Below are positions 23,313 to 27,207 of a stretch of DNA of 64,000 nucleotides, piece by piece; position 1 is the stretch's first letter, and every line of letters starts with the position of its first letter. The position numbers and the translations under genes were made by a program. The notes beneath the pieces were generated by a model that was given only the letters and a program-made list of their open reading frames with translations, was not told where the DNA came from and did no database searches. The DNA is from Octopus bimaculoides (lineage: Eukaryota), in NCBI RefSeq assembly GCF_001194135.2, contig NC_068981.1, positions 141,329,746-141,393,745 on the forward strand, given 5' to 3'.

Positions 23313-25021
23313 CAGTGTGTCTTTGAAGACACAAAGTCTAATTGCAAATCACCGATAATGATAATGTGATACTGCTAGTTTGTGATTGGCTATTGTTCAT
23401 GTTCCCTGTTTTACTTTAAAACTGGTTTCTTTCAGAGAGATGGATGTGGATTTTCAAAAAAGGAAAATAGAAAAAAGGAAAATAGAAAGCAGGACGGTGA
23501 TATTTAGAATATTTTCGAATGAAAATAGGAGAATAGAACACGCGCCGCAGGAAGAGATAGAGGAAATATTGAAGGAACGAATGGGTAAAGGGATAACGTT
23601 CTTCACAAGACGAAGGAAATACGCGACTATAACAGTAACCTTTGCATCAGTAGAGGAGGCGACAACAGACTGATACTGGCAGAGAAATGGACGTTGATAC
23701 CGAACTGTTCGGGCAGAAGACTCGTCAGGGTCAGGGTGGGAAGAATCCCACTGTCCATAGACCCAGACTGGATGATAGTCGCAAGTTTTAATTCAGAGCT
23801 GGTGAAAGGAAGTGAAGACCTGGAGATTTGCATAGTAAACAGAATGCAACAATTGAATTGTTGGGGATACGGTATTGAATTAATCCGTGCCGTAAGCCCT
23901 GAATATTACGACGAAATGGCGGAAAATGTAGAATTACCTAAGGGTGAAAAACTGGAAGTTATGTTAGAGGGGAGACCACCCAAAATGCTACGGATACAGT
24001 GAAAGAGGTCACGTGAGAAGGAAATACGCAAGAGCAGCAGTAGAAATGGTTGAAGAGAGTGTTCAAGAAGATATAGTTGTGGAAAAAATCAGAAACAGAA
24101 AACAGAATATGATGGGAATTTGGCGGAGGTAAAATCCAGGCAAACAGAGAGAAGAAAGTCACCGACGACAGTGGAAGTGAAGAAGTGTAAAGGGATGGCA
24201 GAGGAAACTCACCCCATGACGTGAAAGGGAGAAAATTTACCAGTGGAAGTACCAGCAAAGGAATTAAAAGTGAAGAGTCCTACAGACCAGAAACAAAACA
24301 ACCCAGAATTACGGAAACCTAAAAACTTACACACACAGACGAGACACGTAGAGTTACAGTCAAACGAACACACAGACACACAAATACATGAACAGTCAGA
24401 CTTAGAGACGAAAATACAAGAACGCACTAAACAGCAGGAAAATAGAAACCAAAAGAGACATTATGAAAAACATAAACAAAAGGAAAATTACAGTGAGATA
24501 GGACACCCCAACGTAAAGGAACGTAAAAGTTAAAGACACATTGTGAAAGACTGAAGAGGTAAGTCGATGTAAGGTTGTAAAGACTGTAAGTGAGGAAAAT
24601 AATTATTTGAACTTAAAAACAAAGAAAAAAACAAAAAAACAAGTCAATTTTACAATGGTTGAATGAACAGGATTCCAAAATGTTTTTAAAAAAAATATTG
24701 TGATATAAATTCGGTTGACTTTAGTTTAAAAAAGAAAAGGCAAAATAAGAAATAAATCCTGTTTGAACATTTGTTTTAAAAGGGTGTAGGGCGAGAGCGA
24801 AAAGCGAAGTCACGGTTTCGCATCGGAGCGAGGCAAGTGGTTGTGTAATAGTTAATGGTAAAGGAATACACGCAGTGGGATCGAGATACCCGGCTCATTT
24901 GCATTGTAATTATATTCATTTCATATTCATCCTTCCTATGTTTTATATTCCCGCATGTCTTTGTATGTCCCCTTTGTAATTAGGCTTTGTGCCTGTAATA
25001 AAGAATTAAGCTAGCAAGCCA
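23313..25021 (+). mobile_element. ORF1-only non-LTR-like element, unit 1
   Basis: Frameshifted ORF from ATG 23440: RTVIFRIFS...EEIEEIL...FFTRRRKYATITVTF; GRRLVRVRVGRIP; EGRPPK-CYG[Y]SERGHVRRK[Y] with CX2CX4HX4C spacing; charged/TQ-rich tail to about 24533; about 480-nt 3' region ending aataaagaattaagctagcaagcca. No EN or RT motifs. The 5' boundary is uncertain. Confidence 0.7.
23440..24533 (+). pseudogene. L1/Tx1-type ORF1p-like (Gag-like, RRM-like plus zinc knuckle) pseudogene, copy 1
   Basis: Joins track ORFs 23386-23673, 23694-24002 and 24243-24533 across frameshifts; two knuckle Cys positions read TAC instead of TGC. Confidence 0.7.
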
Positions 25022-26808
25022 CTTTTTTTGGTGTTCTTTGAGGAACTTTGGCTGAATTTTTTTGCGCGTAGCCACCATTGTTGGGTGGTGGGGAATAATT
25101 GAGAATAATATGAGAAGCATGCTGAAGCGGGAGATGTTACAGTGGACTCGAGAGTCGATACAGAAATATAGTGCTGTGGTGGAGAAGGAAGGATCAAATA
25201 TAAAACTGACCCTGCCAGAGGTGGAGTGGAGGACGGTCATATTAAGAACATTTTCGAATAAAAAGAGAGGAAATGAACACGCGCTGCAGGAGGAAGTGGA
25301 GGAAATTTTGGAAGAACATGTGGGAGACAGCATGGTGTTCTTTACGAGAAGGAAGCGATGTGCCTCGGTAGGTAGCCTTTGTATCGGAAGAGGAGGCGGA
25401 AAAAAACCTCCAACAGGCTGATACAGGGAGAGAAGTGGACTCTGGTGCCAGAGTTAGGGTCGGAAGGGTCCCACCGTGGATGGATCCAGAATGGTTAATG
25501 GCGGCGATTGTTTGTTCTACCACTACACTCTCTCCCACTAGAGGTGGAGATAGGGATGGTGGGCCGAGCCCACCAAGTGAAGTGATGGGCCGTGGGTTGG
25601 AGATGATTTGTGCATGAACGAGAAATGTTACAGCGAAGTGCCTCTAACTTTGGAGCTGCCGAATGAGGAGGAGCTGGAGATAATGATGGAGGGGAGACCC
25701 CAAAGTCTTGCGAATGTGGTGAAGGAGGGATCTTGAGGAAGAAATATCCTTGAACAGCGGTGGAAGTAGTGGAGGAGAGTATCCAGGAGAGTCTAGTGGT
25801 AGAGAGGCGGCAGAAGCAGAGAGCGGAACAGGACGGGAGTTTTGTGGAGGTGAGGGCAAGAAGGGGAGAGAGGAGGAGGTCACCAACGATGGTAGAACGG
25901 AAGAAGTGAAAGGCGGTGGAATAGGTGATCCAGCCTACGATGGGAAACGGAGAGGATTCGCCAGTGGGATCGCCGGTAAAAGACTTACAAGTACAGGGGG
26001 GTTCGGACCCACAGACACTCAAGCACACGGACGTACAGACACACAGAAATGTACAGGAACAGATGCAGGACATCTTAGAATCACGGAAGTCTAACAGCAT
26101 GGACGCACGGACGAGGCACGCCGAGTTGTAGTCGGACGAACACACAGATGCCCAAGTGCACAAACACAAGGACGCACGGATACAATGGCGGGAAGGCCGA
26201 AAATTGTAGAAGTGCAGAGACGAGAGACACAAGCACGCGGGACACAAGCAGGGGTAGGGTTTGTAATGAAGTGTAGGGCACCCCAATGTTGAAAGAATCT
26301 CAAGATGAAATGCATTATGAAGTAATGAATCCACTGGGGCCAGAGGCGGATGTCGATCCACGCGCCTCGGTGGTGAATTATGTGGACGAGGGAGAGAAGA
26401 TGAATTGTTAAATGCTTTTTTTCTAGAGACTGTGAAAGATTGAGAAAAACATTTGGTTAAACTTTTTGATTTTTTTTTTTTAAAGGAAAAATAAGTAAAT
26501 CCTGTAACTATTGAATGTACATTTGATAAAACTTTTCTGTAAAATTGTAAGGTGAGAAGGAAAAGGGAAGTCGCGGTTTCACCTCGGAGCGGGGCTGGAA
26601 ATTGTTATTTAAAAAGTCAAGTTTTAAAGGAAAAAGGAATACACGGTTTCATCTCGGAGCGGGAGCGAGATGGACGTCTCATTTTCATTGTAATTTAATT
26701 CATGTTCCATTTAACTTTCATGTGCTTTATTCTTCCCGCGTGTCTGTGTATGACCCCTCTATGTTTTTAGGCCCTGTGCTTGTAATAAAGAATTCTGCTA
26801 GCAAGCCA
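25022..26808 (+). mobile_element. ORF1-only non-LTR-like element, unit 2 (diverged paralogue of unit 1)
   Basis: RTVILRTFS...QEEVEEIL...FFTRRKR; ARVRVGRVPPWMDPEW; ELP..E.LEIMMEGRP followed by a degenerate knuckle (..ECGEGG.LRKKYP); same 3' end gtgcttgtaataaagaattctgctagcaagcca. No ORF2. Confidence 0.7.
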
Positions 26809-26814
26809 TGCTAC

Positions 26815-26857
26815 TCCAGACTGATGATGAGCAATGATTCTGAAAGTACTCTCTGGA
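26815..26857 (+). ncRNA. minimal type I hammerhead ribozyme motif
   Basis: Stem I TCCAGA (26815-20)/TCTGGA (26852-57); core CTGATGA (26821-27) and GAAA (26842-45); palindromic stem III AGTACT; UC cleavage site after 26851; stem I extends via agcaagcca/tggctttgct. Stem II is weak (GAG/TTC). Confidence 0.75.
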
Positions 26858-27207
26858 TGCTGGCTTTGCTGGGTGGAGGTGCTTATCTCTCCCCTTTGAA
26901 AACATAAGGACACAGGAAATGTGTCAAGGCCAACAGGAAACTGTGTTTCCTAGGGCTACATAGCTGTAACATTCTTACTTTTCATGGTATTGTCACATTA
27001 ACTTGACAACATACTAATATTTTATATATNNNNNNNNNNNNNNNNNNNNNNNNNNNNNNNNNNNNNNNNNNNNNNNNNNNNNNNNNNNNNNNNNNNNNNN
27101 NNNNNNNNNNNNNNNNNNNNNNNNNNNNNNNNNNNNNNNNNNNNNNNNNNNNNNNNNNNNNNNNNNNNNNNNNNNNNNNNNNNNNNNNNNNNNNNNNNNN
27201 NNNNNNN

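What the first reader, a model, noticed from the sequence alone, without database searches (positions are those of the whole stretch)
23313..26860. Tandem ORF1(Gag)-only retroelements ending at a hammerhead ribozyme: candidate undescribed non-autonomous system
Seen: two head-to-tail, clearly diverged units of about 1.7-1.8 kb. Each encodes an ORF1-like protein (RVRVGR.P, EGRP + CX2CX4HX4C-spaced knuckle) with no endonuclease or RT, and both share a 3' end (AATAAA + gaatt..gctagcaagcca). In unit 2 the last 9 nt (agcaagcca) pair with tggctttgct to extend stem I of a type I hammerhead. Known: such ORF1s typify L1/Tx1 LINEs; minimal type I hammerheads with palindromic stem III typify Penelope-like elements and retrozymes; Tx1-clade LINEs are often target-site specific. 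Inference, model A: a Gag-encoding, self-cleaving, RT-less element mobilised in trans. Model B: Tx1-like ORF1-only elements insert site-specifically into the stem of a hammerhead repeat, gctagcaagcca (25010-21, 26797-808) being the duplicated target, with a possible decayed third copy tagcaggca near 23306. I know of no description of either arrangement, but cannot search.
Basis: partly seen in the sequence, partly recalled or inferred. Interest (0 to 1): 0.88.

Follow-up and report, generated by a model that had tools for sequence, protein, structure and literature searches.

The report
ORF1-only LINEs targeting a hammerhead repeat
Two decayed copies of an octopus jumping gene that kept only its RNA-binding ORF1 protein landed one after the other at the same spot of a second small mobile element carrying a hammerhead ribozyme. 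This is a new twist on known parasite-in-parasite behaviour, not a new kind of element.

Summary
Window 23313-26808 has two head-to-tail 1.7-1.8 kb units, about 61% identical. Each is a decayed ORF1-only retroelement ending in AATAAAGAATT plus GCTAGCAAGCCA. A minimal type I hammerhead follows at 26815-26857.

The window is octopus DNA. The ORF1 family (two RRM-like domains plus a CCHC knuckle) belongs to L1/Tx1-type LINEs. Relatives in Octopus sinensis, O. vulgaris and Argonauta hians carry an APE-RT-zf-RVT ORF2. They share the T-rich 5' start and the conserved 3' tail, and they show a 16-bp target duplication, a microsatellite target or head-to-tail arrays.

The units are therefore HAL1-like ORF2-less LINE derivatives, and the 12-mer is their target-site duplication. 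Seven further ORF1-only copies in O. vulgaris sit at or next to the homologous site of the same ~360-nt hammerhead repeat. The 3' junction is fixed, the duplications vary (11-20 bp) and two target sites are empty. Unit and repeat divergences disagree between loci.

The hammerhead repeat has Penelope-like insertion architecture and resembles a non-LTR retrozyme. Model A survives only as occasional co-mobilisation of the composite. I rate this a new variant of known kinds (HAL1, Tx1-type targeting of other transposons, retrozymes).

The parts
23288..23312 (+). Possible remnant of the end of the hammerhead repeat's linker, plus a decayed copy of the target 12-mer (..TTCAAACACAGAAGATAGCAGGCA).
   Evidence: Weak similarity by eye to the linker ends of L001, L002 and L003. 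No blastn match further upstream.
23313..25009 (+). Unit 1: a decayed ORF1-only LINE copy lacking about 8 nt at its 5' end. Its closest relative is the L002 unit.
   Evidence: Alignment. 78.7% identical to the L002 unit.
23419..24533 (+). Unit 1 ORF1 remnant with frameshifts near 23670 and 23984 and several stops.
   Evidence: Three-frame translation. tblastn with P0001, P0004 and P0005. Homologues found.
23986..24027 (+). Unit 1 zinc-knuckle remnant, C-X2-Y-X4-H-X4-Y. Two Cys codons have changed to Tyr.
   Evidence: Intact CX2CX4HX4C in P0001, P0003 and P0004.
24807..24835 (+). Hairpin motif in the unit 1 3'UTR (GAAGTCACGGTTTCGCATCGGAGCGAGGC).
   Evidence: Read. Repeated in unit 2 and in the L001, L002 and L005 units.
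24997..25002 (+). AATAAA within the conserved 3' tail of unit 1.
25010..25021 (+). Target-site duplication copy GCTAGCAAGCCA, sandwiched between unit 1 and unit 2.
   Evidence: Analogous flanking repeats in L002, L003 and L010, and the 16-bp TSD of the full-length LINE in L009.
25022..26796 (+). Unit 2: a decayed ORF1-only LINE copy of a different subfamily, with its full T-rich 5' end.
25110..26411 (+). Unit 2 ORF1 remnant, from the ATG at 25110 to the C-terminal NPLGP..VVNY motif, with several frameshifts and stops.
   Evidence: C-terminal motif shared with P0005.
25709..25747 (+). Unit 2 zinc-knuckle remnant, degraded.
26557..26663 (+). Two copies of the 3'UTR hairpin motif (26557-26593 and 26627-26663).
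   Evidence: blastn self-match at 86%.
26784..26789 (+). AATAAA within the conserved 3' tail of unit 2.
26797..26808 (+). Target-site duplication copy GCTAGCAAGCCA. It is also the 5' strand of the extended helix I.
26809..26870 (+). Minimal type I hammerhead of the repeat. Helix I 26815-26820 / 26852-26857; CUGAUGA 26821-26827; helix II 26828-26841; GAAA 26842-26845; helix III A-GUAC-U 26845-26850; C17 26851; helix I extension up to 26870.
   Evidence: Compensatory changes in relatives. Canonical copy in L010.
26871..27029 (+). Body of the hammerhead repeat, cut by the assembly gap at 27030-27207.
   Evidence: About 81% identical to the L001 and L010 copies.
27208..27263 (.). (AC)n(AT)n microsatellite flanking the hammerhead repeat.
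   Evidence: (TA)n-type flanks also in L001, L003, L005 and L010.

Best explanation
Two different retroelements are nested here.

(1) The hammerhead repeat. It is a ~360-nt non-coding element made of a linker, an 11-12-nt site 'R', a minimal type I hammerhead and a ~160-nt body. It inserts into (TA)n-type microsatellites with Penelope-like architecture: 5'-truncated partial tandems, adjacent inverted 5'-truncated copies and short tails. It is best read as a Penelope-dependent, retrozyme-like non-autonomous element. This is inferred from architecture, not shown.

(2) The ORF1-only units. Each ~1.75-kb unit is an ORF2-less derivative of an octopod L1/Tx1-type LINE, analogous to HAL1. It keeps a ~85-nt T-rich 5'UTR and an ORF1 of ~400 aa, with two RRM-like domains, a CCHC knuckle and a low-complexity tail ending in a C-terminal motif. 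It also keeps a 3'UTR ending in the family's conserved tail (..TGTCCCCT..TTGTGCC..AATAAAGA..).

Mechanism, inferred. The units are presumably copied in trans by the ORF2 protein of autonomous relatives through target-primed reverse transcription. The first nick falls at a fixed position about 17-24 nt upstream of the CUGAUGA box. The second nick is variable. The result is an 11-20-bp duplication of R.

Because the duplication restores the site on both sides, a second insertion can land next to the first. In the window, two units of different subfamilies were inserted in turn, giving R-unit1-R-unit2-R-hammerhead. The duplication also leaves the hammerhead intact downstream.

The composite can occasionally be copied as one piece, as in L005. 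All window copies are dead.
For: Protein family and autonomous relatives.
- ORF1 homologues come from octopods where the source is named. Only the CCHC knuckle is recognised by sequence. An AlphaFold model gives two beta-alpha-beta-beta-alpha-beta domains, and its best fold matches are tandem-RRM proteins.
- Relatives carry ORF2. L004 has ORF1 followed by EN, RT and a C-terminal domain. L008 is a head-to-tail array of full-length copies with a ~5.28 kb period. L009 has ORF1 plus a near-intact ORF2.
- The L009 ORF2 hits Exo_endo_phos, RVT_1 and zf-RVT. Its best solved relative is human L1 ORF2p at E=3.5e-40.

Shared ends.
- L009 is flanked by a 16-bp duplication, TCTTCAACTTATGTTT. It starts T-rich and ends in AATAAAGAAATG.
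- L004 ends in AATAAAAAGAATTA and lies between (ATT)n runs.
- The last ~50 nt are conserved between the units and the autonomous LINEs.

Same target in other loci.
- Flanking repeats are identical within a locus and different between loci. The window has GCTAGCAAGCCA, L002 has (AC)CTCTAGCCGAAC, L003 has TGCTGGGTTCG, and L010 has a 20-mer matching at 19 of 20 positions.
- The 5' junction in L001 lies 7-8 nt further into helix I.
- Empty sites exist: the L001 minus-strand copy and a solo copy in L010.

Separate histories.
- The window's hammerhead repeat differs from L001's by 18% and from L002's by 37%.
- The units behave the other way. Unit 2 differs from the L001 unit by 44.5% and from the L002 unit by 35%. 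Unit 1 differs from the L002 unit by 21%.

Selection and RNA origin.
- Third codon positions differ more than first and second (p=7e-4 and 7e-5). ORF1 was therefore under purifying selection while the ORF1-only lineages diverged.
- Unit 2 carries an ADAR-like A>G excess, which fits passage through RNA.

Hammerhead.
- The motif occurred once in 3000 shuffles.
- Four helix I pairs and one helix II pair change on both sides between the window/L001 type and L005.
- The helix III palindromes vary: GUAC, CUAG and AUGCAU.
- L010 holds a canonical copy.

Penelope-like architecture: compared with the description in PMC8557442.

Precedents in the literature.
- HAL1 encodes only ORF1p (PMC5753468).
- Tx1-clade LINEs and their SINEs target other transposons, and tandem insertions sandwich a TSD (PMC4494074).
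- O. vulgaris has recently active L1-Tx1 and Penelope families (PMC13282606).
Against: - Only nine ORF1-only copies (two in the window, seven elsewhere) were examined. The seven were reached through predicted proteins, so there is no genome-wide census. The frequency of solo hammerhead repeats, and of ORF1-only units elsewhere, is unknown.
- Part of the association could come from copying of composites rather than from fresh insertions. L005 shows an inverted 780-nt copy spanning the unit 3' part, R, the hammerhead and the body.
- The R sequence differs widely between loci. A fixed 12-mer cannot be what the endonuclease reads, so the basis of the specificity is unknown.
- Upstream of unit 1 the repeat is barely recognisable.
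- The link between the hammerhead repeat and Penelope-like elements rests on architecture and ribozyme type only. No Penelope RT was tied to it.
- The L1-versus-Tx1 clade was not resolved.
- Ribozyme activity is untested, and most copies carry a core or helix defect.
- L011, an ORF2-bearing relative apparently ending at the same site, is ambiguous.
Confidence: 0.7

Rival explanations
1. Model A. Linker, R, ORF1 unit, R, hammerhead and body form one chimeric non-autonomous element. It encodes a Gag-like protein, self-cleaves, and is mobilised as a whole by Penelope-like machinery. The 12-mers are internal repeats of that element.
For: - Every ORF1-only copy examined is linked to the hammerhead repeat.
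- L001, L002, L003 and L010 show Penelope-like partial tandems and inverted copies around the composite.
- In L005 an inverted 5'-truncated copy spans the unit 3' part, R, the hammerhead and the body at 89% identity. Both copies are flanked by (TA)n.
Against: - The two R copies are identical within each locus (12/12, 14/14, 11/11, 19/20) but differ strongly between loci. That is not expected for internal repeats evolving for as long as the subfamilies have.
- The repeat length varies from 11 to 20 nt while the 3' junction stays fixed.
- Unit and repeat divergences are incongruent.
- The window has two units of different subfamilies with only R between them.
- Empty L-R-hammerhead copies exist.
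- The unit's ends and duplications match those of autonomous LINE relatives.
Confidence: 0.15
2. The junctions are not endonuclease-directed insertions. They arise when a reverse transcriptase jumps between unit RNA and hammerhead-repeat RNA at the short R homology. This joins units to each other and to the repeat and also produces the 'empty' forms.
For: - R is present at every junction.
- Tandem units of different subfamilies are joined exactly at R.
- Both empty and occupied forms occur within one locus, L001.
- L011 joins the 5' part of a unit to the C-terminal half of an ORF2.
Against: - The 5' junction varies by up to 11 nt while the 3' junction is fixed. That is the pattern of staggered target cleavage, not of homology-guided switching.
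- The full-length relative in L009 has an ordinary 16-bp duplication at an unrelated site.
- Template switching does not explain why R pairs within a locus are identical.
Confidence: 0.1
3. Chance juxtaposition: two deleted LINE fragments happen to lie next to an unrelated Penelope fragment.
For: ORF2-bearing relatives (L004, L008, L009) are not next to a hammerhead.
Against: - Seven further ORF1-only copies in seven O. vulgaris loci adjoin the same repeat. Where the junction is preserved, it lies at the homologous position.
- All units share one architecture, and no ORF2 remnant is found in them.
Confidence: 0.02
4. The units are tandemly duplicated pseudogenes of a host CCHC/RRM gene rather than mobile elements.
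For: Gene models exist for family members in octopus annotations.
Against: - Copies are dispersed on many chromosomes with flanking duplications.
- They share 5' and 3' ends with ORF2-bearing LINEs.
- Unit 1 is closer to a copy on another chromosome (L002) than to its neighbour, unit 2.
Confidence: 0.02

Closest known systems
HAL1 (half-L1) of mammals
   Same: A non-autonomous LINE derivative that keeps ORF1 and has lost ORF2, and that amplified as such (PMC5753468). Here too the ORF1-only lineages diversified under purifying selection on ORF1. They share the 3' tail with ORF2-bearing relatives.
   Different: An independent origin in an octopod L1/Tx1-type family. ORF1 is of the RRM plus CCHC kind. 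There is no poly(A) tail. Insertion is aimed at one site of another retroelement.
Tx1-clade target-specific LINEs and their dependants (Tx1 into Tx1D; Tx1-Mar and SINEU-3 into Mariner-N4_AMi; Kibi/Koshi into microsatellites)
   Same: An APE-type LINE group whose members pick specific sites inside other transposons or microsatellites. Duplications are ~16 bp, and two sequential insertions sandwich a TSD (PMC4494074). The window's R-unit1-R-unit2-R layout, L004 in (ATT)n and the L008 arrays fit this behaviour.
   Different: The target is a hammerhead-bearing, Penelope-like short element, and the dependant is an ORF1-coding element rather than a SINE. Membership of the Tx1 clade, as opposed to L1, was not tested.
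Non-LTR retrozymes and minimal hammerheads of Penelope-like elements
   Same: A type I hammerhead with a one-base-pair helix III capped by a palindromic tetraloop. The element is ~360 nt, AT-rich and non-coding. It shows partial tandems, inverted 5'-truncated copies, tails and (TA)n targets (PMC7229834; PMC8557442; bioRxiv 10.64898/2026.07.22.740005). A U.U mismatch at the base of helix II is also reported for axolotl motifs (PMC7229834).
   Different: No long tandem arrays were seen, only partial ones. Circular RNA and cleavage are untested. No autonomous Penelope partner was identified. No cephalopod retrozyme was found in the literature searched.
R2 and other site-specific LINEs processed from host co-transcripts by HDV-like ribozymes (from my own knowledge, not checked here)
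   Same: A site-specific LINE lying next to a self-cleaving ribozyme within a repeated host unit.
   Different: In R2 the ribozyme belongs to the LINE and cuts its 5' end. Here the ribozyme belongs to the target and lies ~45 nt downstream of the 3' end of the insert. Any use of it by the LINE is speculation.

Membership tests
L1/Tx1-group non-LTR retrotransposon (LINE) | ORF2 with an APE endonuclease, a reverse transcriptase and a C-terminal zinc-binding domain | tested here: met
   Met for relatives, not for the window units. L009 ORF2 hits Exo_endo_phos, RVT_1 and zf-RVT, and human L1 ORF2p at E=3.5e-40. L004 and L008 are the same kind. The window units have no ORF2 remnant.
L1/Tx1-group non-LTR retrotransposon (LINE) | Target-site duplications of variable length and a conserved 3' end | tested here: met
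   16-bp TSD in L009. 11-20-bp flanking repeats around the units. 3' tail alignment.
L1/Tx1-group non-LTR retrotransposon (LINE) | ORF1 protein of the RRM plus CCHC kind | tested here: inconclusive
   The CCHC knuckle is found by Pfam and PDB searches. RRM-like folds appear only in a moderate model (pLDDT 62) with weak fold matches to tandem-RRM proteins. There is no hit to the L1 ORF1p family.
Tx1 clade specifically | RT phylogeny placing the element within Tx1 | not tested
   No reference RT set was available. Only similarity to human L1 ORF2p was measured.
Tx1 clade specifically | Preference for a specific target sequence or repeat | tested here: met
   All nine ORF1-only copies lie at or next to the homologous site of the hammerhead repeat. 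L004 lies in (ATT)n. L008 is a head-to-tail array. The sample is small and was reached through proteins.
HAL1-like ORF1-only non-autonomous LINE | Encodes ORF1 only, derives from an ORF1+ORF2 LINE, and amplified in that form | tested here: met
   Nine copies share one architecture and differ by up to ~50%. ORF2-bearing relatives exist. Excess change at third codon positions. It is not a member of mammalian HAL1 itself; the origin is independent.
Hammerhead ribozyme, type I, minimal Penelope-type | Conserved core CUGANGA ... GAAA and an NUH cleavage triplet | tested here: met
   Window: CUGAUGA, GAAA and CUC. Also L001 and L010. The cores of L002, L003 and L005 carry changes.
Hammerhead ribozyme, type I, minimal Penelope-type | Helices I and II supported by compensatory changes | tested here: met
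   Four helix I pairs and one helix II pair change on both sides between the window/L001 type and L005. The window copy has U.U at 10.1-11.1.
Hammerhead ribozyme, type I, minimal Penelope-type | Helix III of one base pair capped by a palindromic loop (dimer-type) | tested here: met
   A-GUAC-U in the window, A-CUAG-U in L001, L003 and L010, and an AUGCAU palindrome in L005.
Hammerhead ribozyme, type I, minimal Penelope-type | Match to a curated covariance model | tested here: not met
   No Rfam hammerhead hit at E<=10 for the window copy or for the canonical L010 copy. The models apparently do not cover this minimal form.
Hammerhead ribozyme, type I, minimal Penelope-type | Self-cleavage | not testable with these tools
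   Needs in vitro transcription of monomer and dimer constructs.
Non-LTR retrozyme / Penelope-dependent non-autonomous element | Short (170-400 nt) non-coding unit with a type I hammerhead | tested here: met
   Linker ~130 nt, R, hammerhead and body together make ~360 nt.
Non-LTR retrozyme / Penelope-dependent non-autonomous element | Tandem arrays and circular RNA | tested here: inconclusive
   Only partial tandems (a truncated body followed by a full unit) were seen in L001, L002, L003 and L010. RNA was not examined.
Non-LTR retrozyme / Penelope-dependent non-autonomous element | Penelope-type insertion architecture: pseudo-LTR, adjacent inverted 5'-truncated copy, tail, microsatellite target | tested here: met
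   compared with PMC8557442.
Non-LTR retrozyme / Penelope-dependent non-autonomous element | Sequence relationship to the pseudo-LTR of an autonomous Penelope-like element | not tested
   No octopus genome search by DNA was available.

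The most novel reading that the evidence does not exclude
The ORF1-only LINE does not merely use the hammerhead repeat as a safe landing site. 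It may exploit the ribozyme itself. Transcripts reading through the weak AATAAA would be cut by the hammerhead ~45 nt downstream. That would give a poly(A)-less RNA whose 3' end carries R and helix I sequence. This tag could pair with the nicked target in another hammerhead repeat and guide homing to the same site. On this reading a LINE derivative would depend on the ribozyme of a Penelope-type element for 3'-end formation and target choice.
Probability: 0.12. Interest if true: 0.8.

Novelty: new variant of a known kind. Interest (0 to 1): 0.52.

Why it matters
- It shows that ORF1-only ('half-LINE') elements are not confined to mammals. In octopods they form an old lineage that diversified under selection on ORF1.
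- It adds a ribozyme-bearing, Penelope-type short element to the list of transposons chosen as targets by L1/Tx1-type LINEs.
- It points to retrozyme-like hammerhead elements in cephalopods. None is described in the literature I could search.
- The fixed 3' junction next to the ribozyme makes one question testable: does a LINE use a neighbour's ribozyme or RNA structure for homing?
- The A>G footprint in unit 2 suggests that ADAR hyper-editing of retroelement RNA can be fixed in the octopus genome through reverse transcription.

Tried and rejected
- Rfam at gathering and at E<=10 found no hammerhead. It also missed the canonical L010 copy, so the test is not informative.
- Pfam on the pieced window ORFs found nothing.
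- Single-sequence AlphaFold of P0001 was useless, with pLDDT 35.
- Two of the three word-indexed protein searches returned almost nothing. Search A4 was capped at the 8000 candidates sharing most words, which I put down to its low-complexity tails, and A5 also gave little. The exhaustive HMMER search found the family instead.
- MFE folding of the hammerhead region is not better than shuffles, with z between -0.2 and -1.7. The support comes from the motif and from covariation.
- MAFFT misaligned the hammerheads by one column. I therefore parsed the helices by hand in a script and did not use the pair-count tool.
- A search for other copies of the unit or of the repeat in the window found none.
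- Pfam on the minus-strand RT-like fragment upstream found no hit.
- A search for ORF2 remnants inside the units found none.
- L011 could be an ORF2-bearing master at the same site. It remains ambiguous because the hammerhead is not recognisable after its R-like 10-mer.
- The host-gene and chance-juxtaposition readings were rejected on the evidence from the related loci.

Full report
**1. What is in the window**

The stretch 23313-26808 holds two head-to-tail units on the + strand: unit 1 (23313-25009) and unit 2 (25022-26796). They align end to end. Global identity is 61%, and blastn blocks are 67-71% identical. No further copy lies in the 64-kb window.

Each unit carries an ORF1-like frame broken by frameshifts and stops. 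Each ends in AATAAAGAATT.. followed by GCTAGCAAGCCA, at 25010-25021 and 26797-26808. It is intact in homologues.

A hammerhead motif follows the second 12-mer directly.
- Helix I: UCCAGA / UCUGGA.
- Core: CUGAUGA and GAAA.
- Helix II: three pairs above a U.U mismatch.
- Helix III: A-GUAC-U.
- C17 lies at 26851.

The 12-mer pairs with 26861-70 to lengthen helix I. The motif as defined occurred once in 3000 shuffles of the window.

Rfam gives no hit. It also misses a perfectly canonical family member, so this negative says little.

**2. The protein and its relatives**

The only word-indexed hits were three Octopus proteins. An exhaustive HMMER search found 122 relatives. Those with names are from Octopus vulgaris, O. 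sinensis, O. bimaculoides and Argonauta hians.

Sequence searches recognise only the CCHC knuckle. A model built on a nine-sequence alignment (pLDDT 62) shows two beta-alpha-beta-beta-alpha-beta domains. Its best, though weak, fold matches are tandem-RRM proteins.

None of the ten longer relatives I scanned with Pfam shows an RT or EN domain. Their genomic loci settle the origin.
- L004 (O. sinensis): ORF1 is followed by an ORF2 with endonuclease, RT and a C-terminal domain.
- L008 (O. vulgaris): a head-to-tail array of full-length copies with a ~5.28 kb period.
- L009 (Argonauta): ORF1 plus a near-intact ORF2. This ORF2 hits Exo_endo_phos, RVT_1 and zf-RVT, and human L1 ORF2p at E=3.5e-40.
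- L007, a metagenome contig, also shows a relative followed by an endonuclease start.

The ORF1 is therefore that of an L1/Tx1-type LINE family. I could not separate L1 from Tx1.

**3. The units are ORF2-less members of that family**

L009 is flanked by a 16-bp duplication. It starts with a T-run and ends in AATAAAGAAATG without poly(A). L004 ends in AATAAAAAGAATTA and lies between (ATT)n runs.

The units have the same T-rich start. Their last ~50 nt align with those of the autonomous elements. No ORF2 remnant is detectable in them.

Third codon positions differ more than first and second positions between units (p=7e-4 and 7e-5). ORF1 was therefore under purifying selection while the ORF1-only lineages diverged. 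This parallels mammalian HAL1, a non-autonomous L1 derivative that encodes only ORF1p (PMC5753468).

**4. The hammerhead belongs to a second element**

The sequence from the 12-mer onward (26797-27029, then an assembly gap) recurs next to ORF1-only units in other loci. Put together, the repeat is about 360 nt: a ~130-nt linker, the 11-12-nt site R, the hammerhead, and a ~160-nt body ending in ..CTTTAT.

Its insertions show four recurring features.
- They lie in (TA)n-type microsatellites.
- An upstream 5'-truncated body forms a partial tandem.
- An inverted 5'-truncated copy lies next to it.
- Tails of ~45-60 nt are present.

This is the architecture described for Penelope-like elements, whose pseudo-LTRs carry minimal hammerheads (PMC8557442). 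Short non-coding hammerhead elements of this size are called non-LTR retrozymes and are thought to depend on Penelope-like elements (PMC7229834; bioRxiv 10.64898/2026.07.22.740005). O. vulgaris has recently active Penelope and L1-Tx1 families (PMC13282606).

The ribozyme reading is supported across copies.
- Four helix I pairs and one helix II pair change on both sides between the window/L001 type and L005.
- The helix III palindrome varies: GUAC, CUAG, AUGCAU.
- L010 holds a fully canonical copy.

A U.U mismatch at the base of helix II, as in the window copy, is also reported in axolotl retrozyme motifs (PMC7229834). Cleavage itself is untested.

**5. How the two are joined**

The unit 3' end abuts R at the same place in every locus where it is preserved. 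That place is about 17-24 nt upstream of CUGAUGA. The 5' junction varies. Where both ends are preserved, the sequence between the two junctions is repeated on either side of the unit.

| Locus | Flanking repeat |
|---|---|
| Window | 12 nt, GCTAGCAAGCCA |
| L002 | 12-14 nt, (AC)CTCTAGCCGAAC |
| L003 | 11 nt, TGCTGGGTTCG |
| L010 | 20 nt, 19 of 20 identical |
| L001 | 5' junction 7-8 nt further into helix I |

The two repeat copies are identical within a locus but very different between loci. A fixed first nick with a variable second nick is the signature of target-primed reverse transcription. Repeats of 11-20 bp match the 16-bp duplication of the full-length relative.

Unoccupied sites exist: the L001 minus-strand copy and a solo, (TA)n-flanked copy in L010.

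The histories also differ. The window's hammerhead repeat is 18% from L001's and 37% from L002's. Unit 2 is 44.5% from the L001 unit and 35% from the L002 unit. Unit 1 is only 21% from the L002 unit.

Units and repeats were therefore joined several times independently. The two window units come from two separate events at the same site. The same layout, tandem insertions sandwiching a TSD, is described for Tx1-dependent SINEs inside a Mariner element (PMC4494074).

**6. What remains of model A**

In L005 an inverted 780-nt copy at 89% identity spans the unit 3' part, R, the hammerhead and the body. Both copies are flanked by (TA)n. The composite was therefore copied as one piece at least once. 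This could have been done by the repeat's own machinery or by read-through transcription of the unit.

As a general account, model A fails on three points: the within-locus identity of R, the variable repeat length and the incongruent divergences.

A template-switching origin of the junctions is a minor rival.

L011 joins the first ~1 kb of a unit to the C-terminal half of an L1-like ORF2. About 320 nt further on it reaches ..GAATG|TAGCAAGCCA. This may be an ORF2-bearing relative ending at the same site, but the locus is too damaged to be sure.

**7. Limits**

- Nine ORF1-only copies were examined, and the seven outside the window were reached through predicted proteins.
- No DNA search of octopus genomes was possible.
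- The abundance of solo repeats and of units elsewhere is unknown.
- The Penelope link is architectural only.
- The LINE clade is unresolved.
- Ribozyme activity is untested.
- What determines the target site is unknown, since R itself varies.

**8. Verdict**

The feature is real and non-random. It is best explained as sequential, site-specific insertion of HAL1-like ORF1-only derivatives of an octopod L1/Tx1-type LINE. The target is the base of helix I of a Penelope-type, retrozyme-like hammerhead element.

It is a new variant of known kinds, not a new category.

The most novel reading still open is that the LINE derivative uses the neighbour's ribozyme for 3'-end formation and homing. I give that about 12%.

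Noticed in passing
window 25022-26796 (unit 2), mainly unit positions ~200-1400: Strand-asymmetric A>G excess relative to the consensus of unit 1 and the L002 unit. A>G affects 138 of 523 A sites (26%), against T>C at 20 of 258 (7.8%), Fisher p=1e-10. The 5' neighbour order is T>A>C>G, as for ADAR. Unit 1 and the L002 unit show no such excess. This suggests a hyper-edited RNA intermediate.
   Followed up: partly
window 24807-24835, 26557-26593, 26627-26663; also L001 11395-11444 and 11558-11640: The 3'UTR of the units holds two or three copies of a ~30-37-nt hairpin motif (..CGGTTTCRCCTCG-NAG-CGAGGC..). Its function is unknown. It could be a recognition element for the reverse transcriptase.
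   Followed up: no
window ~19500-22414, minus strand: A decayed LINE fragment in the opposite orientation, just upstream of unit 1. RT-like motifs (..WIDYRKAYDMIP.., a YxDD-like stretch) and a conserved C-terminal region are seen by eye only. There is no Pfam hit at E<=0.01.
   Followed up: partly
L008 2445-17026 (O. vulgaris OX597840): At least three full-length copies of an autonomous family member lie head to tail, ~98% identical, with a ~5.28 kb period. Only a few bases separate the 3' tail of one copy from the next 5'UTR.
   Followed up: partly
L004 9723-9778 and 15346-15375 (O. sinensis CM016872): A full-length autonomous family member is flanked on both sides by (ATT)n, which suggests a microsatellite-targeting subfamily.
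   Followed up: no
L011 5918-8855 (O. vulgaris OX597823): A chimera: the 5'UTR and first ~1 kb of an ORF1-only-type unit are joined to the C-terminal half of an L1-like ORF2. About 320 nt later comes a 10-mer equal to the window's target (TAGCAAGCCA). It is either an insertion-mediated deletion or a deleted ORF2-bearing master.
   Followed up: partly
L001 9607-9640 (minus strand) and L002 9285-9310: The end of the repeat's linker holds a second, degenerate copy of the R sequence a few bases upstream of R, for example CTAGATAGGCA-TCTCCAA-CTAGTAAGCCA. Its origin is unexplained.
   Followed up: no
window 27030-27207 and twelve other N runs: Thirteen assembly gaps lie in the window, many next to microsatellites. 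One cuts the 3' end of the hammerhead repeat, so that end cannot be read here.
   Followed up: no
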